DNA from: Octopus vulgaris
Lineage: Eukaryota
Assembly: GCA_951406725.2 (NCBI GenBank)
Contig: OX597823.1
Span: 26,246,001-26,308,000 of the forward strand
Length of the DNA stretch: 62,000 nucleotides
Direction: 5' to 3'
Shown: positions 10,370-56,918 of the stretch, piece by piece
Layout of the letters: every line of letters starts with the position of its first letter
How positions within the stretch are numbered: the stretch's first letter is position 1
Translations under genes and position numbers: made by a program
The notes under the pieces: generated by a model
What the model was told of the DNA's origin: nothing
What the model saw: the letters and a program-made list of their open reading frames with translations, nothing else
Database searches by the model: none

Positions 10370-11361
10370 TTCAAAATATACTGATGAAATGCATACACAT
10401 TGCTATATTTGCTATATGTATGAGTGTCTGTGTATCTGTGGTGTGCGTATTTGTATACATATATTTATGTATATAGATATGTCTTTGTGTATTATGTATA
10501 TATACATACATACACACATACATATGGGCGTGCATACATAAATGTAATATATTACAAGTACTTGTTTGTGTACAACACATACAGCAAAGTTTTTTTTTTC
10601 TTTTGTGTGTATGTATCTGAGATAATAATATTAATACCTTGTAGTATGTGAATTCTGTGCATATACATACATATGCATGCACACACACACACACACACAC
10701 ACAGCTACATAAAACATATACATGTAGTTGTGTATGTTCATTTTATTTAAATATAAACCATATATTTAAAAAAAAACAAAAAGAACCATTGAAGTGTAAG
10801 AATACCATTCCTTCTCTCTTTCTCTCTCTCTCCAAGATCTGAACCCTCACCTACCCCCAGACAACTATTTTATGTTTGTCTCTTCCACATAATGTCATGA
10901 GGAACGATTCTTAATTGTTCCTTTGATAATATCAGTGTCATTGATGTCTCATTAGAAAAGATGTTACCATCAACATTTATTATTATTATTATTATATTTT
11001 GGATTGGTTCTATCCACTTCCATGTCTTTTCACTAAAACTTACACTTCAACCATTTTCTTTCATTTATTTTTTTATTGTGAGTTGAATGTTTATTTTCAT
11101 GTTTTAACATGAGTTTAAGAGTGTTTGTCATATTTCTGCTATGGATTTTTGGTTATATATATATACACTCACACACACACATACATACTTACAACATACA
11201 TACATATAGAGATAGATAGATAGATACACACACACACGTTTAATCATAATGAAGATTTTTGTGAGAAGAGGGAATATCTGTTTACTTACATGATTTATAT
11301 AAGCCACAATATCCTCTCATGGTGGCCAAATTTTTAATTTCTCATTGGCAGGTAGCATGGA

Positions 11362-11670
11362 TTTCAAATTCCGCCAAGGCTGACTTTGCCTTTCATCCTT
11401 TCGGGGGTCGATGAAATAAGTACCAGTTAAGCACTGGGGTCAATGTAATCTACTAACCTCCTCTCTGAAAATTTCAGGCTTTGTGCCTATAATGGAAAGG
11501 ATTATTATTAAGGGAATTGGATGGCTGCATCAGTTGCACATTGGACAAAATGCCTGGCAGTTTTACTTTAGTTACGTTCTTTTAAGCTCTGAGCTAAATC
11601 TTGCCAGAGTCTACTTTTACCTTTCAATCCACCTGTAATTTAAGTTCAGTCAACAAAAATCTTGGGCTAG
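11362..11670 (+). mobile_element. Two tandem SINE-B copies (5'-truncated, degenerate)
   Basis: TTCAAATTCCGCCAAGGCTGACTTTGCCTTTCATCCTTTCGGGGGTCGATG core; ends in GAAAGG(ATT)n at ~11510; a second decayed copy follows. Confidence 0.7.
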
Positions 11671-19917: not shown

Positions 19918-20913
19918 ATTTCACTTGTGCTGCTAATGGTCCTGAGAAAGGCATAAATATCATACACTATCACCTTTTACCTTCTCATATGTAACAAAAG
20001 AAATTGTGGCCTTGTGCCAAAGAAGGAAATCAAAAAAAAAAATTATAATTAAGCTTTTGTTGTTGTATATTTTATTGAGGTGGGGGGAGGAGAGTGATAA
20101 TGTTTTTAGGTGTCACTGTTCAGTTAAGCTAGTGCCTTTCTGCTTCTGGAACCTTGGGTAAGTTCCTTAAGCTAGGATACTTTTACAGCTAATCACTTGC
20201 TTGTGGCATTCCTGAACAATGGCCTTTTAGAAACTTTCTAAAAATACAATATTCTTCTCTTTAAGTTCTAATCACCAGCCCAATTACAAAACATCATGTC
20301 AGTGCCATTATTATTATTATTCATTTGTTAATTTCTTTGCTGCTTATGCTTGCCAGGGAAAATGGAGAACTTCTTCCACACTAAATCAGAGGAAAATATC
20401 TCAAATCACATGGGCTTCATTTTGAGATTATATTGTTCCTCTCTAATTTTATCTCACAACTCTGAAAGCCAGTGTTTCTACCCCACTGGTGCAATTATCT
20501 CTTATTCTCCTCTTTCAAGCTTTCAAAGGGCAGGGATACAAAATTTAGATGTCTTCACAAGTTTTCATGCAAATCTAGAAACCAATGTTTACTTTATCAG
20601 AAAACAATGTATTGTCTTGTTTTAGAATTTATTAAGTTTATGCTGAGATTTAAAGTATTTTTATGCAAATTTCATGGGCTGAACAATAAATAATAAATTC
20701 ATTTTTGATTGCAGAAATGATATTAATTTTTAAAAAAAATTATAAATAAATGAAAAAGAGAAAAAAAAACTAATAAAAATATTTTTGGCTTTATTTTATT
20801 CTAAGATTTTCTTTGGAGCATTTGTTGCACTTCTTAAACCAGAATAATTTTTTGGAAATTAATTTTGTAAATATAGTAGAAATATGATATTTTGTATTAT
20901 TATTATTATTATT

Positions 20914-20997
20914 AATAAGGTGGTGAGCTGGCAGAATCGTTAGCACACTAGGCAACGATACAGTTTTAGCACACTAGGCAATGATACAGTTACAGTT
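20914..20997 (+). mobile_element. SINE-B head fragment with a 26-bp tandem duplication
   Basis: GGTGAGCTGGCAGAATCG followed by TTAGCACACTAGGCAAYGATACAGTT twice (20940-20991); preceded by (ATT)n. Confidence 0.65.
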
Positions 20998-22812: not shown

Positions 22813-23519
22813 TATGTTTGGAGTTGGGGTAAACTAAATTTACATCCTTTCAGGTTGGATAAGATGTGTCAGTCATGTCAATTTAATCAGTTCTCCACTA
22901 TCCCATCCCTTTTGGATGGTAAATTTAATCATTTGTTTGGTTTGCCCTCACCATCTGGATGATGTGTATCATTAGTGGAACCTATTTTGTTGCAAGAATT
23001 TAAGCTAGGCCCCTAATATAAGAGTAATATCCTTCCACCTGCTTTAGTGGTCCTGAGAAAAACCGTCTATGCTGGCTGACTCCTACAGTTCTTTTTTAAA
23101 AACCATGGTATTCCAGCAATAGTGGTAAGAACTCAATCAATCTAACTTAATTCCAGTTTCCATTCCAAATCACCTGAGTCTTCATTTATGTGAGCCCCAG
23201 GTTGGTTAATGTCCTTTTATTATTCTAATTTATTATTGAAAAGTCACGGAAAAAGTAACAGCATGTCTTGAAGAAGTGAAATCTTTATAGTCCACCACTC
23301 ATTCTTTTAATGTGCAGGAGTCAGTCAGATTTAACCCTTGTTTTTATTTTATTGCATTCAGCCCTGAGCACCACCTGTACTACACATAAACCTGCTTACA
23401 GTGTCATGTAAAAACCATAAACTACTTTTTAAAAAATTTTAGACATAGCAATCCTTTGTATTTCTGCAGTTTCAAAATACCTTTCATTATTATTATTATT
23501 ATTATCATTATTATTATTG

Positions 23520-23845
23520 GTAGATTAACTGGATTGTTAGAGTATTGGACAAATTGCTTTGCAGTAATTGATCTGGTTCTTTATATTCTGAGTTCAAATT
23601 CTACCAAGGTCAACTTTGCCTTTCCGTTCCCCAGCAGTAACATACTAGGGTTGATCTAATTGACCATACCCCCTCCTCTATGGTCTTGTGCCTCAGAAAT
23701 TATTATTAGGGCAGTGTCATATGGCAGAATCAGTAGCACTCCTGACAAAATACCTTTACATTCTAAGTTCATATCTTCCTAGATCAATTTAATTTCATGT
23801 ACCTAGCTCCAAATTTTGTAACTTTGTGCCATTGTAAGAAAATAT
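23520..23845 (+). mobile_element. Two tandem degenerate SINE-B copies bounded by (ATT)n
   Basis: CTGAGTTCAAATTCTACCAAGGTCAACTTTGCC core; (ATT)n before the first copy and between the two. Confidence 0.6.
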
Positions 23846-49611: not shown

Positions 49612-49719
49612 CAGCGATTAGGAAGAGAATTAGCCTAGATTAGATGCAATTTGGCTTTGTGCCAGGAAGAAGTACTACCAAAGCCAGCTTCCTAGTGAGA
49701 AAACTGCAAGAGAAGTACT
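49612..49719 (+). mobile_element. RTE reverse-transcriptase fragment
   Basis: MQFGFVPGRSTTKASFLVRKLQEKYLA, the typical RTE RT segment around QFGF-x2-GRST. Confidence 0.8.
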
Positions 49720-50029
49720 TAGCTAATGTGTGTGCATGTGTGTGTGTGAATAGTAGCCAAATTTCCCTCAAATCACACTCACCTATCTTACAAAAGGAGA
49801 GAACACATTGGACAATGCAGTTCTAAATATACAAAAAGATGAGATTACATACATATGATATGCAACAAAAGAATACAACAATGTTGTGCATAACAGTCTT
49901 CCTTTATTAAAAAAATAGGATTGACTCATTCATTTTGCTCAAGGGAACTATTTTCTGTTGTTTTTTTATTTTTGTTCTTTTTATTTTTGGTTTCGAATTG
50001 TTACAGACAAGTAAATAATAATAATAAAG

Positions 50030-50349
50030 CAAATAGAACGTTCACTCCCAAATATTGTTATTATCAATAAAGAGGCAAAAGTGTGTTGCTTCATCAATGG
50101 TGCTTGTCCTTTTGATGCAAGGCTGTTAGAAAAAGAATGTGAGAACATAGAAAATACCAATATCTAAACACACTGCAAATAATTTAGAATTGCCTTAAAG
50201 TTATTGATATCCAAATTGTAATAGGAACTGTTGCTGAAAGTTTGAATGGTCAGATGAGGTTGTTGGATATCAAGATGAATTTCCTGACTCTACAGTAATC
50301 ATGTTTGTTTGGTACAGTGAGGACTGTCATAAAGGTGCTAGTTTTCTAA
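50030..50349 (+). mobile_element. Dong/R4 non-LTR fragment A (decayed RLE 3' end)
   Basis: PNIVIINKEAKVCCFINGACPFDARLLEKE (decayed PD...D motif) and LQ*SCLFGTVRTVIKVLVF*; preceded by (AAT)4. Confidence 0.65.
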
Positions 50350-50354
50350 TTTTC

Positions 50355-50613
50355 TAATGTTGTGGGATACAATTTGATACCTGATGATCCAAAACCAGCA
50401 GGAGAACAATGAAATAATGAGGGGATGAAATGATAATAATCATAAAAGTAATAGAACTGTTACAAAAGGTTTGTCTCCTTGGCATGACCAGAATAATCAG
50501 CAAAGTATTAGATAGCTGAAAAGAATGGATAATATGGTACCGTAGGCTGTAGGTAGCAAGCCCACTGCACATGCAAGACTCCGGGAGCTCCAACAAAACT
50601 TGTGATAAAAAGA
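50355..50613 (+). mobile_element. Dong/R4 fragment B (3' end plus UTR)
   Basis: LQKVCLLGMTRIISKVLDS* (stop 50517-50519), 3'UTR, then (AAT)22. Confidence 0.7.

Positions 50614-50679
<66 letters not shown>
50614..50679. repeat. (AAT)22
   Basis: Perfect tract between Dong/R4 copies B and C. Confidence 0.95.
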
Positions 50680-50680
<1 letters not shown>

Positions 50681-51576
50681 GAGCTGGACAATATCTTGCA
50701 CAAAGAAATGAAAGACATCACTGCATATTTCAAGTGCCTCAAACTATTCTTGAAATCAAAACTCAACTCAAGGAACCTTGTGACTGCCATCAACATATGG
50801 GCTGTTGCTGTAGTCTACTATAGTGCACCCGTCCTGAGATGGACACAAATGGAGATTGACCAACTCGATCACATTACACGAAAGACAATGACAATGCATG
50901 GTGCCCTCCACCCTAAGGCAAATGTACACAGGCTCTGTATGAAGAGAGGTAAAGGTGGATGTGGGCTGAATAGCATACAGGAGTGAATCAACAGTGAAAG
51001 ACAAAACATGCCAAAATATTTGGTAAACAGCAAACAAGACCTGTTACAGTATGCTGCTGGTGCAGAAGGAATTAGCAAAAATGAACTTGAGAGTGCTCCT
51101 GAATTCCAATGAAGAACAGCCAATGAGAGAGAAGGAACTCTACTCCTATGGAATTACATGGTCAGTTCCACTGTGAAACCAACAAATTAAAAGACCAGGA
51201 AGCATGGAGGTAGCTCAACAAGGGTGACCTAAAAAAGAAGACTAAAAGCCTAATCATCACTGCCCAGGACCAGGCATTGAATACCAACACAGTGAAAAAG
51301 AATATACACCACACAAGTGCATCGGACCTCTGCAGAATGTGTGGGAAGAGGGTCGAAAGCCTGACTTACATTGTTAGTGCTTGTGAAAGTCTTGTGCAGA
51401 AAGAGTACAAGCTTAGACATGACAAGGTACCCCAAAACCTCCACTGGCTACTATGCCGTAAGTATGGATATGAGGTTACAGGTGCTTGGTACCAACATAC
51501 ACCAGAAAAGGTAATGGACGAAAAGAGGAAGGCAAAATTCCTCTGGGACTACCCACATAAATTCAATCAAGAATAA
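50680..51576 (+). mobile_element. Dong/R4 fragment C (RT thumb to zinc knuckle; stops and frameshifts)
   Basis: FLKSKLNSRNLVTAINIWAVAVVYYS...ALHPKANVHRLCMKRGKGGCGL; AQDQALNT...CRMCGKRVESLTYIVSAC...RHDKV...FLWDY. Confidence 0.85.
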
Positions 51577-51670
51577 GAACGAACCCGAGTCAAATCACAA
51601 ATAATAATAATAACAACAACAACAACATCAATAATAATAATAATCGTAATAATAATGATAATAATAATAG

Positions 51671-52970
51671 CTGCTGAGTTGTAATAGGATGCACCACCCA
51701 AAGGCAGACGTAGATCGCCTTTACCTTCCCAGAGCCCAAGGAGGTCAAGGCCTGATCCAATTTGAACTAGCTTACAAAACAACCACAATTGGACTGGCCA
51801 AATATCTCGAAATATATTGAATGACTGGATGCTAAAGCTCGTGGAAAATCACGAGAGACGAAAGAAGCTTCATTCTATTATAAAGGAAAGCAAAAAATTT
51901 GCTATTGATCTCGTGCAGGATACCCAAACAGAACAACCCGAGGGAAGTACGGCAATTATTGTTGCAAAGAAGGTGAAAATAATGGCAACGAAAAAAGCGC
52001 ACGAGCAATTGGCTGATAGGTGGGAGGAGAAACCTCTGCACGGCAAATATGTGACCCGCAGCAAACAAGCTGATGTTGACCAGAAGCAAACCCATCAGTG
52101 GCTACGGAGCTCAGGGCTAAAAGCAGAGAGTGAAGGTTTCATCCTGGCTGCTCAAGATCAAAGCCTATTAACCCGGAACTACCAGGCCAATGTGATGAAA
52201 AATGGAGCAGACCCAAAATGCCGATTCTGCAACGACATGATTGAAACAGTGGACCACCTAATCTCTGGATGTAAAGTCTTAGCTCCAGTGGAGTATAAAT
52301 TAAGACATGACAGAGTTGGCCAATATCTACACTGGCTAATAAGTCGGCATTACAATATCAAAACTGCTGACAAGTGGTATAATCACCACCCTGAGGCTGT
52401 AACTGAAGGAGAAAATGTAACCATTCTGTGGGACTTTCCAGTACATACAGACCGAACCATCAAGGCCAATAAACCAGATATTGTTGTGAAAGACCAAAAC
52501 AATAAAGTTTGCTTATTGATCGACATGAGCATCCCCTGTGATCATAATATCTCAGCGAAAGAGTTTGACAAGCTCAGAAAATATAAAGACCTACTCATTG
52601 AAATTGAGAAAATGTGGCATCTCAAGGCGGTTACAATACCAGTGATCGTAGGAGCACTAGGAATGATCAAGAAGGGAACCGAAAATTATATGAGAATGAT
52701 CCCTGGCTTACCATCCCTGCAAGAAGTGCAAAAGATTGTCTTAACTGGTACATCACACGTATTGAGAAGAGCATTGTCGATGTGAGAACTGTTGCTGCTC
52801 ATGTATTTTAATTTAACTTAAAAAAAAAAATAAATAAAAAATAAAAAAAATGAACAAACTATTGAGTTTGGTTTAATGGCCTACCAATGTATACTATGAG
52901 TTTCTTTGCCCTAGGAGTCGGGAAGACACTCGGCAAGAAATGGAAGCAAATTTGAAAGAAGAAAAAAAAA
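51671..52970 (+). mobile_element. Dong/R4 fragment D: youngest copy, 5'-truncated, with 3'UTR
   Basis: MHHPKADVDRLYLPRAQGGQGL, one frameshift near 51815, then a 322-codon open frame to the stop at 52785; flanked by (AAT)n on both sides. Confidence 0.9.
51817..52785 (+). CDS. Open frame of copy D: linker, CCHC zinc knuckle and PD-(D/E)xK restriction-like endonuclease (no RT; probably not expressed)
   Basis: CRFC-x8-H-x4-C knuckle; YKLRHDRV; WDFPVHTDRTIKANKPDIVVKDQNNKVCLLIDMSIP; KEFDKLRKYKDL; C-terminus QKIVLTGTSHVLRRALSM. Confidence 0.7.
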   Translation: MNDWMLKLVENHERRKKLHSIIKESKKFAIDLVQDTQTEQPEGSTAIIVAKKVKIMATKKAHEQLADRWEEKPLHGKYVTRSKQADVDQKQTHQWLRSSGLKAESEGFILAAQDQSLLTRNYQANVMKNGADPKCRFCNDMIETVDHLISGCKVLAPVEYKLRHDRVGQYLHWLISRHYNIKTADKWYNHHPEAVTEGENVTILWDFPVHTDRTIKANKPDIVVKDQNNKVCLLIDMSIPCDHNISAKEFDKLRKYKDLLIEIEKMWHLKAVTIPVIVGALGMIKKGTENYMRMIPGLPSLQEVQKIVLTGTSHVLRRALSM

Positions 52971-52974
52971 AGTA

Positions 52975-53009
<35 letters not shown>

Positions 53010-53010
53010 A

Positions 53011-53292
53011 GCTCAGATATCAGGAAACCCCAAAATGGCAAAAATTCAAAAGATAGTGCTCATGGGAACTGCCCATATCCTACGTAAAATACTGTCTATG
53101 TAATTTCAGATTTCAAAACAAACATAATTTTCTTATGGATTCTTGGACATTCTCTAGAACAACACTATGTACAAAACCAAATATATGACACCCTAGGCAT
53201 AACACTAACATGAACTTCTAACTTGTCTCTTGAGGTCTCTGGGTGAGACTTAGAGCCAACTTGTACAAATACAAAGCAAAAGTCAAACATAA
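53011..53292 (+). mobile_element. Dong/R4 fragment E (last 30 codons plus 3'UTR)
   Basis: AQISGNPKMAKIQKIVLMGTAHILRKILSM* (stop 53101-53103); (AAT)n on both sides. Confidence 0.85.
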
Positions 53293-53308
53293 AATAATAA
53301 TAATGATA

Positions 53309-53387
<79 letters not shown>

Positions 53388-53403
53388 TAATAATAATAAT
53401 AAT
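53293..53403. repeat. (AAT/GAT)37
   Basis: Tract between Dong E and an inverted SINE-B. Confidence 0.95.
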
Positions 53404-53828
53404 GGTTTCAAATTTTGGCTCAAGGCCAGTGGTTTTGAGCAAGAAGAATAGTAAAATACATCAACCCAGTTATCAATTGGTATTTATTTTATCAACCCCA
53501 GGAGGATGAAAAACAAGGTCAACCTTGGCAGAATTTGAACTCAGAATGTTAAGTCAGAAGAAATACTGTTAAACATTTTGTTTAGCATGCTAATGATTCA
53601 TATTTCTTTATCGGCCACAAGGGGCTAAACATAGAGGGGACAAAGACAGACAAAGGGATGAAGTCAATTACATTGACCCTAGTGCAGAACTGGTACTTAA
53701 TTTATCGAACACCAAAAGGATGAAAGGCAAAGTTGACCTCGGCAGAACTTAAACTCAGAACATAAAGACAGACGAAATACTGCTAAGTATTTTGCTCAGC
53801 GTGCTAATGATTCTGCCATCTCACCGCC
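53404..53828 (-). mobile_element. Two tandem SINE-B copies
   Basis: Plus strand GGATGAAA...AATTTGAACTCAGAA twice; second copy ends GCTAATGATTCTGCCATCTCACCGCC. Confidence 0.8.
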
Positions 53829-53859
53829 TTTTCCAGCTCACCGCCTGGATTCTGCTAGT

Positions 53860-54396
53860 GATCTAAGTGCAGACATGACTGTGTAGGCAAACAATTGCAT
53901 TAGGATGTTAGATGAGTGTGTGACTTCAAAACAATAGAAAAGTGGTGTGAACATGAAACAAAAGCTATGATAGAAAATGAGAATTACATAATCTTGTGGG
54001 ACTTCACCATACGTTTGAGGCAAGAAGACCAAACATGATTATAGAGGACAAAATAAACAGTGTAAGATCATAGTGTAATTTCCTATGATAGCAGGGTCAA
54101 TACCAAAGAAAATAAAGAAATTGAGAAATATCGGGATTTTGTCAGAGAGCTTGAGGAGACTATGGAAGACCAAGACAACAATTATTTCTGTAGTAATCAG
54201 TGCACTTGGCACAACACCCAAAATGTTGCCTAAAAAAACTGAAGAAAATTGGAATTGAAACTTGTATTGTTGGCCTGCAGAGAACTACTGTCCTATATTC
54301 TGCAAGAATCCTAAGAAATATTCCTGAGATTTGAGGAGACTTGTCACCAAACCTCAAGATAAAATAACTGCTAACTAAATTAGCATATCCTAGCGA
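53860..54396 (+). mobile_element. Dong/R4 fragment F
   Basis: RHDCVGK, ENENYIILWDFTI, EIEKYRDFVREL, VVISALGTTPK, LQRTTVLYSARILRNIPEI*; followed by (AAT)22. Confidence 0.8.

Positions 54397-54462
<66 letters not shown>
54397..54462. repeat. (AAT)22
   Basis: Perfect tract between Dong F and an inverted SINE-B. Confidence 0.95.
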
Positions 54463-54678
54463 CCTTTCTACTATAAGCACAAAGGCAGCAATTTTGGGGA
54501 AGGGGGTTAAGTCAATTATATCAACCCCAGTATGCAACTGGTACTTAATTTATCGACCCTGAAAGGATGAAAGGCAAAGTCAATCTCGGTTGAATTTGAG
54601 CTCAGAACGTAGCAGCAGATGAAATACAGCTAAGCATTTCACCCAACGTGCTAATGATACTGCCAGCTTACTGCCTAA
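54463..54678 (-). mobile_element. SINE-B copy
   Basis: Plus strand CCTTTCTACTATAAGCACAAAGG...GGATGAAAGGCAAAGTC...GCTAATGATACTGCCAGCTTAC. Confidence 0.85.
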
Positions 54679-54719
54679 TTATGGAGAGTTAAAGAGAAAA
54701 GAGAGTTGAAGAGAAAAGA

Positions 54720-55760
54720 AAGTCTACTGGAAAGGAGAAACCATGGTCAATTTGAAAGAAATTCATAGGATATCAAGGATAAAACAGCACCATGGATTTA
54801 GCAAGGTGGTTTGAAGTGTACCCCTGAAAGCTTGAAAATTGTAGCTCAAGACCAAACTTTTGCTACCAATTAGGTGAAGTGAAGCATCTACAAAACCTCT
54901 GACACCCAGAAATGCAGACTCTATGTAAAGAATGTGGAAAATGTAAGCCACTTGATAAGTGGATATGAGAGCTGTGGTGTATGCGAGAGATTAGAAATAA
55001 AGGCACCTACCTTCTCTTCACTCAGATGGAGACCCTTCAGCGGTAACGGATCCTTCAACACAGCCCGACCCGAACGCTAGAAATAGCAGCTGCTTCTCCC
55101 AACATTAACAACTGGGTGACCGGCCTCGAAAAAGGCAGAATCCTGCCCTCACTGCGCGCATGTCACTGCTGCCCCTTCCGGTCAGCCCCAAGTTCCAATC
55201 AGCTCCCCAGCTGCTGACGACATCCCACAAGAGCCTTGCAAAAAAGGAATGCAAATACTGCCATGAAAAAGTCTGTTTGTATCTTCTTTGGCTTTTATAT
55301 CAAAAACACCAATATAAAGTAATAGAGAATTGGTATCAGTATGTGCCTTGTAAAGTAAGGCAGGAGGATGAGAAAGCAACGATATTCTGGGATTATGATT
55401 TTCTGACTGAGAGAGTAATGGAGCATTGCTGACCGGGCATTATCATATTGGACAAGAAAGACAAATACTGTCAAATCATTGATGTAGCCATATGAAATGA
55501 CAAGAATATTGCAAGTAAAGAGGTTGAATTGGAAGTGGAGATGGCAAGACTGTTTGAAACGTGAGGGGATAATGTAAATGTGATACCAGTTGTGATCAGG
55601 GCATTAGGGTCAATCCCATTGAAACTTCAGAATATCTTTAAAGTGGTTTGGAATACATTGCAACAATGGTGTCATACAACAGTCAGCCTTGTTAGGGTAC
55701 TGCACACATTTTAAGGGAAGTATTATCTGTCTAAGGTCCGTGCTTCATTGCATGAAAAAA
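54720..55760 (+). mobile_element. Dong/R4 fragment G, interrupted by a solo LTR
   Basis: AQDQTFATN...CRLY...SHLISGYES | LAKKECKYCHEKV...IFWDYDF...CQIIDVAI...GTAHILREVLSV*. Confidence 0.8.
54973..55229. mobile_element. Solo LTR, 257 bp
   Basis: Begins TGTGG and ends CCACA; 5-bp TSD AGAGC (54968-54972 and 55230-55234); removing it restores the host reading frame; GC-rich with a CCAAT box at 55195. Confidence 0.8.
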
Positions 55761-55811
55761 TGGTGGTGGTGGTGGTGGTGGTGGTGAGGTGGCAAAGAAG
55801 AAGAAGAAGAA

Positions 55812-56600
55812 GAAGAAATGGAGAGAAAAACCATGGTCAATACTTGAGAAGGCTTGACAGGGGAGTAAGCCCAAAGTGAAAGTCAACAATGGCACAAAAG
55901 CTTCAGACTAAAAGTGGAAGCAGAACTGCTGATTCTCACTGCAAAAGACCAATGCCAGACCACAAACAGTTATAAAAACAAAATAATCGTAAAAGGAACC
56001 TAACAGCAAATGCAGAATGTTCAACCATCACAATGGCTGACCATATCAATCTGAGTAAACATATTGACATACAGACACACAGACTGGGCAATTTGTCTTT
56101 ACTTCAATACAGAAACAGACAAGAAGTGGTATAAACATGTAGCAAACATAATGCATGACAAAGAGCTGGTTACAGTCATCTGGGATATACCTGTCCAAAC
56201 TAACAAAGACATCAAGGAAAACTGTTCACACATAATAATGAAGAGGTTGAAAAAAAAAAACTGGTTCACACTGATAGACATTGCAGTCTCTTCAGAGAAA
56301 AATGTTACTTGAAAAGAAATCCAGGAAAACCTGTCAAAATACAAGGATCTTGAAATTAAAATATTCAAGTTGGAGAGACGATGGTGAAAAATAAATGAAG
56401 CATTAAGTATAATAAAAAAAAATATGAACTAATTCATTGAATTCATACCTGAGCTCACAGCTCTACACATTTATCCAAAAAATAACTCTGCTATGAACAG
56501 CTCACATTCTGCACAAAACATTATCAATTCAATAACACAGTTCATATAGAACAATCTTCACACACAACATACAATAAACAGCTAATAAAGTAAACCACCT
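55812..56600 (+). mobile_element. Dong/R4 fragment H (decayed)
   Basis: HGQY, LILTAKDQ, KWYKHV, VIWDIPVQTNKDIK, LIDIAVSSEKN, SKYKDLEI, QKITLL*TAHILHKTLSIQ*. Confidence 0.75.
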
Positions 56601-56918
56601 GATTCACATTACACATGCCACACACAACAGAATAGATATTAATATGACACAAGAAACAACAAATTGAAATCTATAACAAAATAAACTGATGTAGTGCATT
56701 AACAGGAGAAGCAAAAAGCTGTTTGTTGTTTGATAGACAAAAAGATTATTATCTTGTTCTGAAACATGTAAGTGTTGGTGACAGAAAGGGTATCTAGCCA
56801 TTGAAAATCTTCCTCAACGAACTATTCCACCTGACACATGCAAGCATTGAAAAGTGGATGATAATGGCGATGATGATGGTAATGATGTGTGTTTGTGAGC
56901 TGTGTGTAAGCATTTTAA

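What the first reader, a model, noticed from the sequence alone, without database searches (positions are those of the whole stretch)
50014..56600. Head-to-tail pile-up of eight Dong/R4 retrotransposon 3' ends on (AAT)n tracts
Seen: eight fragments (A-H) lie on the + strand within 6.5 kb. Seven show the clade's C-terminal signature in clearly different versions (LFGTVRTVIKVL, LLGMTRIISKVL, LTGTSHVLRRAL, LMGTAHILRKIL, LYSARILRNI, LGTAHILREVL, LL*TAHILHKTL) with unrelated 3'UTRs and different decay levels. They are therefore independent insertions from several families, not a tandem duplication. (AAT)n tracts sit at 50014, 50614, about 51600, 52972, 53293 and 54397. No such fragment was noticed elsewhere in the window. 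Established: R4-clade elements use an RLE and target-primed reverse transcription, are often 5'-truncated, and Bombyx Dong inserts into TAA repeats. Inference: a self-renewing landing pad, where each insertion leaves (AAT)n on both sides, orientation is fixed by the target strand, and several lineages share the target over long times. The targeting principle is known; this multi-family density in a cephalopod may not be described.
Basis: partly seen in the sequence, partly recalled or inferred. Interest (0 to 1): 0.75.

Follow-up and report, generated by a model that had tools for sequence, protein, structure and literature searches.

The report
Dong-like LINE pile-up on TAA repeats
A 6.6-kb stretch holds nine broken tail ends of jumping genes from different families and ages, all pointing the same way and joined by TAA repeats, because these elements insert specifically into TAA repeats and leave new ones behind; the principle is already known, so this is a clear but ordinary example.

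Summary
All lie on the + strand. Six (AAT)n tracts separate most of them.

The fragments share no nucleotide similarity. Each matches its own genomic family, at identities from 66-72% (A, H) to 97-100% (D). They are therefore independent insertions, not a duplication. No other such fragment occurs in the 62-kb window.

Fragment D belongs to a very young family: at least 124 copies are 98-100% identical in protein, and some have open frames up to 1258 aa.
- 30 of 30 copies end in (TAA)n.
- 9 of 13 visible 5' junctions of truncated copies also abut (TAA)n.

So the repeat is the target and not only a tail.

In 48 other loci, 21 of 23 neighbouring Dong-like fragments are co-oriented (p=7e-5). (TAA)n tracts lie 222:12 on the element's strand. 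The window is thus a large instance of a genome-wide pattern.

TAA-specific Dong elements are known in insects and a snail, and Dong-R4 is known to be abundant and recently active in octopus. This is a new member of a known kind, of moderate interest.

The parts
50014..50025 (+). (AAT)4 remnant directly upstream of fragment A
50027..50443 (+). Fragment A: old Dong-like 3' end (endonuclease region, stop, 3'UTR). It ends in a degenerate TAA-like stretch.
   Evidence: Profile hit E=2.4e-4. tblastn aligns it to residues 1071-1111 of the reference ORF. Genomic relatives are only 66-72% identical.
50452..50613 (+). Fragment B: last ~22 codons plus 3'UTR of another family
   Evidence: At least 39 genomic copies at 85-90% end exactly at the tract. 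Loose-end consensus shows that other copies continue upstream in frame.
50614..50679 (+). (AAT)22 tract between B and C
50680..51550 (+). Fragment C: post-RT region, CCHC knuckle and start of the endonuclease. It is truncated at both ends; about 430 nt of the family's 3' end is missing.
   Evidence: tblastn aligns it to residues 741-1066 at 35-42%. Its family is 83-88% identical. The family's true end ...gacgtcta(TAA)n lies about 430 nt further on. The break is sharp at 51550.
51551..51598 (+). Ninth piece: terminal ~50 nt of another repeat family that ends in (AAT)n
   Evidence: At least 39 genomic copies at 86-93% cover this stretch and run into the repeat.
51599..51668 (+). Degenerate (AAT)n/(AAC)n tract
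51669..52972 (+). Fragment D: young 5'-truncated copy with an open 322-aa C-terminal frame and a 187-nt 3'UTR
   Evidence: It is 97.2% identical in DNA to a natural full-length copy. At least 124 genomic copies are 98-100% identical in protein.
52973..53012 (+). (TAA)n tract after D
53013..53292 (+). Fragment E: last ~30 codons plus 3'UTR
   Evidence: tblastn aligns it to residues 1153-1180. The same family occurs at 82-94% in 7 other loci; in at least four of the five full-length matches (L013, L028, L029, L030) it ends at or a few bases before (TAA)n.
53293..53403 (+). Long (AAT)n tract with ATG interruptions
53404..53842 (-). Two SINE-like repeats (about 53404-53597 and 53598-53842) with their sense strand on minus. 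The tail end of the first abuts the tract.
   Evidence: The tRNA-like acceptor stem is weak. ARAGORN and Rfam found nothing.
53864..54396 (+). Fragment F: endonuclease region, stop and 3'UTR, decayed
   Evidence: tblastn aligns it to residues 1019-1147. Its family is 74-82% identical and several matches run to the tract start.
54397..54462 (+). (AAT)22 tract
54463..54680 (-). SINE-like repeat with its sense strand on minus. Its tail end abuts the tract and its head lies about 20 nt from G.
54702..55742 (+). Fragment G: knuckle-to-stop region, decayed, interrupted by an unrelated 259-nt repeat at 54972-55230
   Evidence: tblastn aligns it to residues 949-1153. The G family is 71-76% identical in the 3' half and 68-86% in the 5' part; the insert's family is 83-87% identical.
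55757..55806 (+). (TGG)n(GAA)n between G and H; no TAA here
55809..56613 (+). Fragment H: knuckle-to-stop region plus 3'UTR. It is among the oldest, and no tract follows it.
   Evidence: tblastn aligns it to residues 947-1180 at about 31%. Its longer genomic matches are 65-73% identical.

Best explanation
The region is one old (TAA)n microsatellite locus that has been hit at least nine times, over a long period, by different families of non-LTR retrotransposons. These elements carry a C-terminal restriction-like endonuclease (RLE) and are of the Dong/R4 type.

Proposed mechanism:
1. The element's endonuclease nicks the TTA strand of the repeat.
2. The freed 3' end pairs with the (UAA)n end of the element RNA and primes reverse transcription (target-primed reverse transcription).
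3. Reverse transcription usually stops early, so copies are 5'-truncated.
4. Because priming uses one strand of an asymmetric repeat, every copy has its sense strand on the TAA strand.
5. The split target plus the copied tail leaves (TAA)n on both sides of the new copy. The locus therefore stays a target and fills up head to tail.

Shown here: the anatomy, the independence of the copies, their different ages, (TAA)n at both junctions, and the genome-wide co-orientation.

Inferred from what is known of R2 and Dong: the nick, the priming chemistry and the role of the endonuclease.

Later events blurred the array:
- a 5'-junction deletion removed C's 3' end;
- minus-strand SINEs with (ATT)n tails inserted into, or supplied, two tracts;
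- an unrelated repeat inserted into G;
- the oldest tracts decayed.
For: Location and strand:
- Hits to a natural full-length ORF lie only at 50681-56529, all +. The profile scan gave the same picture.

Independence and age:
- The fragments share no nucleotide similarity.
- Best non-self identities differ by fragment: A 66-72% (with short pieces to 78%), B 85-90%, C 83-88%, ninth piece 86-93%, D 97-100%, E 82-94%, F 74-82%, G 71-76% over its main 3' half, H 65-73% over its longer matches.

D family:
- 30 of 30 copies end ...gaaagaagaaaaaaaaa(G)(TAA)n, with 4 to more than 30 units.
- 9 of 13 true 5' truncation junctions abut (TAA)n.
- The full-length copy starts right after ...aataataa.

Other families:
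- About nine C-family copies end in the family's terminal sequence directly followed by (TAA)n.
- The E, B and F families end at the tract.

48 other loci:
- 23 secondary Dong-like elements lie in 91.9 kb of flank; 21 are co-oriented (binomial p=6.6e-5).
- 20 of them, including 18 of the 21 co-oriented ones, have (TAA)n between neighbour and primary copy.
- Seven lie 100 nt or less downstream of a young D copy.
- (TAA)>=4 tracts number 222 on the element strand and 12 on the other.

Protein features:
- RVT_1 and zf-RVT domains.
- CCHC knuckle at residue 993 and KPD-x15-D endonuclease motif.
- The only PDB relatives are R2 proteins.

Literature:
- Dong targets TAA repeats in Bombyx, Anopheles and Biomphalaria (PMC3812793).
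- Dong-R4 has 5 recently active families and 1129 recent insertions in Octopus vulgaris (PMC13282606).
Against: - No empty site or polymorphic insertion was seen, so the target is inferred from flanks only. Short-read contigs bridged no junction.
- The G-H junction and H's 3' end carry no TAA.
- F and G lack a tract at their 5' ends.
- C is 3'-truncated, which target-primed reverse transcription alone does not produce.
- Four of 13 D-family 5' junctions do not abut a clear (TAA)n. One abuts (GAA)n, one an opposite-polarity repeat and one only two repeat units.
- Two of 23 neighbours, and the pair in L032, are inverted.
- The 48 loci are the best-scoring copies of two families, not a random sample.
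- Endonuclease specificity was not tested.
Confidence: 0.85

Rival explanations
1. The same pile-up arises by repeated insertion, but specificity comes mainly from base-pairing. The RNA's (UAA)n tail pairs with any nicked (TTA)n DNA (microhomology-guided priming), and the endonuclease does not read the TAA sequence itself.
For: - All families share the tail repeat but have unrelated 3'UTRs.
- SINE-like repeats with (ATT)n tails also sit inside the same repeats in a fixed, opposite orientation: 24:4. That suggests tail-to-target pairing can by itself direct insertion.
- One D copy has its 5' junction at (GAA)n.
Against: - RLE-type clades are mostly sequence-specific through their proteins (PMC4640811).
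- The endonuclease motifs are conserved across the families.
- The pattern is very clean: 30 of 30 3' ends, and tracts 222:12.
- Sequence data cannot separate the two mechanisms.
Confidence: 0.25
2. Passive accumulation. The elements insert without target preference, each brings its own (TAA)n tail, and the cluster is a repeat graveyard where fragments survive. The shared orientation is chance.
For: - The window is repeat-rich, with many microsatellites and SINEs.
- Some junctions in the array lack a tract.
Against: - (TAA)n also lies upstream of 5'-truncated copies, where a tail cannot be.
- 21 of 23 neighbours are co-oriented.
- All nine pieces in the window lie on one strand.
- There are no fragments in the other 55 kb of the window.
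- Neighbours typically start within tens of bases of the tract.
Confidence: 0.05
3. Tandem or segmental duplication of one element followed by divergence.
For: The layout is head to tail on one strand.
Against: - The fragments share no nucleotide similarity.
- Each is far closer to dispersed copies elsewhere (up to 90-100%) than to its neighbours.
- Truncation points and 3'UTRs all differ.
Confidence: 0.01

Closest known systems
Dong (Bombyx mori), DongAg (Anopheles gambiae) and DongBg (Biomphalaria glabrata): TAA-microsatellite-specific non-LTR retrotransposons (Xiong & Eickbush 1993; Kojima & Fujiwara 2004; both as cited in PMC3812793)
   Same: - Single ORF with RT, then a CCHC knuckle, then a C-terminal restriction-like endonuclease.
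- Insertion into (TAA)n with the repeat on both sides.
- 5' truncation.
- DongBg shows that the type exists in molluscs.
   Different: - Here there are many coexisting families of very different age in one cephalopod genome.
- One of them is very young and abundant.
- The stacking is dense and multi-family.
- Clade membership by RT phylogeny was not tested here.
Dong-R4 LINE families annotated in Octopus vulgaris and other coleoids (PMC13282606; PMC8967140)
   Same: - The genome size (2.8 Gb) matches.
- The class of element matches.
- The report of many near-identical, near-full-length recent insertions (5 families, 1129 insertions) matches the D family seen here.
   Different: In the text I searched, those papers do not mention the TAA target, the strand rule or head-to-tail arrays. 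I could not link their consensus sequences to the D family.
Arrays of other site-specific LINEs: R1/R2 in rDNA units, TRAS/SART in insect telomeric repeats, and Utopia inserted in tandem in U2 genes (PMC4640811; the first two from general knowledge)
   Same: A repeated target gives repeated, co-oriented insertions. Targeting a multicopy sequence acts as a safe haven.
   Different: The target here is a simple trinucleotide repeat, which the insertion itself regenerates and lengthens. One locus can therefore be refilled without a pre-existing gene array.
Birth of microsatellites from LINE/SINE 3' tails (Alu/L1 poly(A) tails; PMC3812793)
   Same: Retroposon tails create and extend A-rich repeats. 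SINE tails here may seed tracts.
   Different: Here the tail-derived repeat is in turn the specific target of another retroposon class, on the opposite strand.

Membership tests
RLE-type non-LTR retrotransposons (R2 group: CRE, NeSL, R2, R4, HERO) | Reverse transcriptase domain of the non-LTR type in a single long ORF | tested here: met
   RVT_1 scores E=9e-30 at residues 479-740 of a natural 1180-aa ORF, with FYMDD present. Open frames reach 1258 aa.
RLE-type non-LTR retrotransposons (R2 group: CRE, NeSL, R2, R4, HERO) | CCHC zinc knuckle downstream of RT, followed by a C-terminal PD-(D/E)xK-like endonuclease, and no N-terminal APE domain | tested here: met
   - The knuckle CRFCNDMIETVDHLISGC lies at residue 993, and zf-RVT is hit below Pfam's cutoff.
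- (K/R)PD-x15-D (..LIDM/V) is conserved in four of the five copies aligned.
- Pfam finds no APE/Exo_endo_phos domain.
- The only PDB relatives are R2 proteins, aligned from RT to the knuckle/endonuclease region.
R4/Dong clade | RT-domain phylogeny groups the element with R4, Dong and Rex6, and not with HERO, NeSL, R2 or CRE | not tested
The label rests on the target, the architecture and the published Dong-R4 annotation of octopus genomes (PMC13282606).
Dong-type TAA specificity | Copies flanked by (TAA)n on both sides, with the sense strand on the TAA strand | tested here: met
   - 3' side: 30 of 30 D-family copies, about nine of 19 C-family copies, and the E, B and F families.
- 5' side: 9 of 13 truncated D copies and the full-length copy.
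- Strand: tracts 222:12.
Dong-type TAA specificity | Pre-insertion (empty) sites are uninterrupted TAA repeats | tested here: inconclusive
   Contigs from four public runs did not bridge any junction. No long reads were available.
Insertion by target-primed reverse transcription | Variable 5' truncation with intact 3' ends | tested here: met
   D-family copies start at many different reference positions (1371-2787) but share the same 3' end. Seven of the eight LINE fragments in the window keep the stop codon and 3'UTR.

The most novel reading that the evidence does not exclude
The TAA/ATT microsatellites of this octopus genome work as a two-sided retroposon trap. Dong-like LINEs insert with their sense strand on the TAA strand. 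An abundant tRNA-derived SINE with (ATT)n tails inserts into the same tracts on the opposite strand.

Each class would then seed and lengthen the other's target. That mutual feeding would account for much of the roughly 55,000 long TAA tracts, and for mixed LINE/SINE arrays like this one.

Such strand-partitioned sharing of one microsatellite by a LINE lineage and a SINE it does not mobilise has, to my knowledge, not been described.
Probability: 0.3. Interest if true: 0.55.

Novelty: new member of a known kind. Interest (0 to 1): 0.35.

Why it matters
- It gives sequence-level evidence that the abundant and still young Dong-R4 LINEs of octopus are TAA-repeat specific and strand-bound. This explains where these insertions go (safe-haven repeats, not genes) and why they appear as nested, co-oriented arrays.
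- That matters for repeat annotation, because arrays can be mis-merged or mis-dated.
- It matters for reading reports of somatic LINE activity in octopus brain.
- It bears on how microsatellites and retroposons maintain each other.
- It also offers a natural series of related endonucleases with a simple DNA target.
- It does not change the known principle.

Tried and rejected
- **Unbiased genome sample.** I wanted a random sample of (TAA)n tracts to measure enrichment. The pattern search gave counts: 27,535 forward plus 27,872 reverse tracts of 11 or more units. I did not try another route. The enrichment test therefore rests on 48 loci chosen as best hits of two families.
- **Read laying on 50000-55900 with four runs.** Only short contigs came back, and multi-copy families swamped the depth. 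No contig bridges a junction of D, so nothing can be said on presence/absence polymorphism. Locus-specific contigs of the old parts (A in one run, F in all four, parts of G in all four) match at about 98-99% in runs under four organism codes.
- **SINE identity.** ARAGORN and Rfam found no tRNA or known RNA family in the SINE-like repeats. A fold of the putative tRNA-like head shows an acceptor-like stem but is weak (z=-1.6). The SINE's strand was instead inferred from a stand-alone copy with an (ATT)3 tail at 11340-11510.
- **Tract-length asymmetry.** A trend for longer tracts upstream than downstream of D copies was not significant (Wilcoxon p=0.078, n=10). I dropped it.
- **B and A in the fetched loci.** Neither fragment has a relative there.
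- **Pfam on the short fragments.** It gave nothing useful.
- **The search of earlier findings.** It was closed at all three tries.
- **Large protein searches.** They were not used. Clade placement was the only open point they could address, and source names rarely give LINE clades.
- **Consensus sequences.** I built only a detection profile of a 141-column C-terminal region from five natural copies.


Full report
**What is there**

The stretch 50014-56613 was read directly and translated in three frames. The window is G000:C10:26246001-26308000, in a 2.8-Gb genome of 227 contigs. That size fits the published Octopus vulgaris assembly (PMC13282606).

As reference I used a natural full-length copy from elsewhere in the genome (L031:2423-5965:-). 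Its ORF is 1180 aa long and the element is about 3970 nt.
- It carries RVT_1 (E=9e-30) and a weak zf-RVT hit.
- It has a YMDD box, the CCHC knuckle CRFCNDMIETVDHLISGC at residue 993, and a KPD-x15-D motif.
- The protein ends ...LTGTSHVLRRALSM.
- Its only relatives among solved structures are R2 retrotransposon proteins, aligned from RT to the knuckle/endonuclease region.

It is therefore a non-LTR retrotransposon with a C-terminal restriction-like endonuclease (RLE).

tblastn of this ORF against the 62-kb window hits only 50681-56529, always on the + strand.

I also built a profile of the last ~140 residues from five natural copies elsewhere. It was run against all 3239 six-frame stop-to-stop pieces of the window. 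Its 15 best hits all fall at 50015-56532 on +.

Fragments C, D, E, F, G and H are clear. A is significant (E=2.4e-4). B is too short for protein statistics (E=1.2). It is still supported:
- At least 39 genomic copies at 85-90% end exactly where the tract starts.
- Contig loose ends show that other B-family copies continue upstream in frame as IKEIGIECPV, which resembles F's KKIGIETCIV (my translation).

The quoted C-terminal peptides are present; G needs one frameshift. All listed (AAT)n tracts are confirmed.

**The fragments are independent insertions**

All-against-all blastn of the eight fragments gives nothing except one 51-nt stretch at 74.5% between C and D. Each fragment has its own dispersed family in the genome.

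| Fragment | Window coordinates | Best non-self identity |
|---|---|---|
| A | 50027-50443 | 66-72% (short pieces to 78%) |
| B | 50452-50613 | 85-90% |
| C | 50680-51550 | 83-88% |
| D | 51669-52972 | 97-99% in DNA, 98-100% in protein |
| E | 53013-53292 | 82-94% |
| F | 53864-54396 | 74-82% |
| G | 54702-55742 | 71-76% (3' half) |
| H | 55809-56613 | 65-73% (longer matches) |

So the array was built over a long time. The youngest piece sits in the middle and the oldest at the edges. Identity to the nearest paralogue is only a rough proxy for age.

1. C is truncated at its 3' end. Its homology to the family stops sharply at 51550, and the family's real end ...gacgtcta(TAA)n lies about 430 nt further on.
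2. The 48 nt that follow (51551-51598) are not filler. They are the terminal ~50 nt of yet another repeat family that ends in (AAT)n, with at least 39 copies at 86-93%. The array therefore holds nine 3' ends. The simplest reading is that this ninth element primed in C's tail tract and its 5' end joined further upstream, deleting C's 3' end. That is an inference.
3. G carries an unrelated 259-nt repeat at 54972-55230.
4. G and H are joined by (TGG)n(GAA)n and not by TAA. Nothing TAA-like follows H.
5. Three SINE-like repeats (53404-53842 and 54463-54680) lie between E and F and between F and G.

**Target or only tail?**

The young D family answers this.
- The genome search scored 124 candidates out of 85,612 first-look candidates. 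All were 98-100% identical in protein, and some had open frames up to 1258 aa.
- In all 30 loci fetched, the 3'UTR ends ...gaaagaagaaaaaaaaa(G) followed by (TAA)n of 4 to more than 30 units.
- Thirteen loci show a true 5' truncation point; L002's apparent junction is an internal deletion. In nine of them (TAA)n lies directly upstream, often for 60 nt or more. Two are ambiguous. One abuts (GAA)n and one an A-run.
- The full-length copy begins right after ...aataataa.

A tail cannot lie upstream of a truncated 5' end, so the repeat is the target. About nine of 19 C-family copies end in the family's terminal sequence directly followed by (TAA)n. In at least four of the five full-length E-family matches the copy ends at or a few bases before (TAA)n.

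**The pile-up is a general feature**

I oriented 48 independent loci by their D- or C-family copy and scanned their flanks (91.9 kb in all).
- They hold 23 further Dong-like elements of other families.
- 21 are on the same strand and 2 on the opposite strand (binomial p=6.6e-5).
- 20 of the 23, including 18 of the 21 co-oriented ones, have (TAA)n between neighbour and primary copy.
- 20 of the 48 loci have such a neighbour.
- Seven young D copies sit 100 nt or less upstream of an older fragment (one of them inverted). They landed in the tract at that fragment's 5' junction.
- (TAA)>=4 tracts in these loci number 222 (7275 bp) on the element's strand against 12 (339 bp) on the other.

For comparison, the 55 kb of the window outside the array holds no fragment. 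Even the loose candidate count gives about one per 33 kb genome-wide.

Exceptions exist. There are two inverted neighbours. In L032 a tail-to-tail inverted pair marks a place where the repeat changes polarity. L031 shows two D-family copies in tandem, 5.2 kb apart.

**Mechanism**

The data fit the Dong model of target-primed reverse transcription.
- A nick in the TTA strand pairs with the (UAA)n RNA end and primes cDNA synthesis.
- This fixes orientation, gives intact 3' ends and variable 5' truncation, and leaves TAA on both sides.
- The site therefore remains a target.

The anatomy and statistics are shown here. The cleavage and priming steps are taken from what is established for R2 and assumed for Dong. 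Sequence data cannot tell whether the endonuclease reads TAA itself or whether tail-to-target pairing does most of the work. I give that variant about one chance in four.

**The SINE side**

A stand-alone copy at 11340-11510 shows this repeat's sense strand ending ...ggaaagg(ATT)3. At 20895-20930 and 23486-23620, sense copies have (ATT)n directly upstream of their head. The SINE thus sits in the same microsatellite with its sense strand on the ATT strand, opposite to the Dong elements.

Around Dong copies in the 48 loci, 24 of 28 SINE-like hits have the same relative orientation as in the window. The tracts at 53293 and 54397 abut SINE tail ends, so they may be partly SINE tails. This suggests that SINE tails seed landing pads and that SINEs reuse them. 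I followed this only partly. ARAGORN and Rfam do not recognise the repeat, and the tRNA-like fold is weak.

**Comparison with what is known**

- TAA microsatellites are the recorded target of Dong in Bombyx, DongAg in Anopheles and DongBg in the snail Biomphalaria (PMC3812793, citing Xiong & Eickbush 1993 and Kojima & Fujiwara 2004).
- Four of the five RLE clades are mostly target-specific, and some HERO families target microsatellites (PMC4640811).
- In Octopus vulgaris, Dong-R4 is the LINE class with the most recently active insertions: 5 families, 1129 insertions, 4.7 Mb (PMC13282606). It is listed among the abundant, anciently shared coleoid repeats (PMC8967140).
- Neither octopus paper mentions TAA, a strand rule or arrays in the text I searched.

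The targeting principle and its presence in molluscs are therefore known, and arrays are the expected result. What is added here is the explicit demonstration for a cephalopod, for several families, with numbers. Clade membership (R4/Dong versus HERO and others) was not tested by phylogeny.

**Limits**

- Reads from other individuals gave only short contigs and no junction-spanning evidence.
- The search of earlier findings never opened.

**Verdict**

This is a new member of a known kind: a clean and unusually dense example, of moderate interest.

Noticed in passing
window 53404-53842, 54463-54680, 11340-11510, 20895-20990, 23486-23640: An abundant SINE-like repeat ends in (ATT)n on its own sense strand and often has (ATT)n upstream of its head as well. 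It shares the TAA/ATT microsatellites with the Dong elements but on the opposite strand. Near Dong copies in 48 loci its orientation is 24:4.
   Followed up: partly
window 51551-51598: This is a ninth 3' end: the terminal ~50 nt of a further (AAT)n-tailed repeat family with at least 39 copies at 86-93%. It abuts the sharp 3' truncation of fragment C, which suggests a deletion at its 5' junction.
   Followed up: partly
window 54972-55230: A GC-rich 259-nt repeat is inserted into fragment G. Its own family is 83-87% identical in at least 6 copies. Its type is unknown.
   Followed up: no
window 49620-49730: A short RT-motif fragment (FGFVPGRST...) lies on the + strand about 300 nt upstream of the array and ends at a (TG)n run. 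The Dong-like ORF does not hit it at E<=0.01, so it probably comes from another LINE class.
   Followed up: no
window 55757-55806; L014 5' junction: (TGG)n(GAA)n sits where a TAA tract would be expected between G and H. One D-family copy elsewhere has its 5' junction in (GAA)n next to a TAA tract. This may be a TAA-to-GAA drift of old tracts.
   Followed up: no
L031 (G000:C1:157816500-157826499); L032 (G000:C4:172483500-172492000): L031 holds two D-family copies in tandem on one strand, 5.2 kb apart; one is full length with an open 1180-aa ORF. L032 holds a tail-to-tail inverted pair of D-family copies where the repeat switches from (TAA)n to (TTA)n.
   Followed up: partly
G000:C1:807468-820193 and C1:942200-943234: Dozens of G(TAA)>=11 tracts lie on one strand within 13 kb and within 1 kb. 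They may be very long interrupted TAA arrays or dense pile-ups. They could not be fetched.
   Followed up: no
L002 (G000:C13:34361197-34365159): A D-family copy has an internal deletion (reference residues about 730-777 are missing). It is followed by two more co-oriented Dong-like fragments of other families within 1.3 kb.
   Followed up: no
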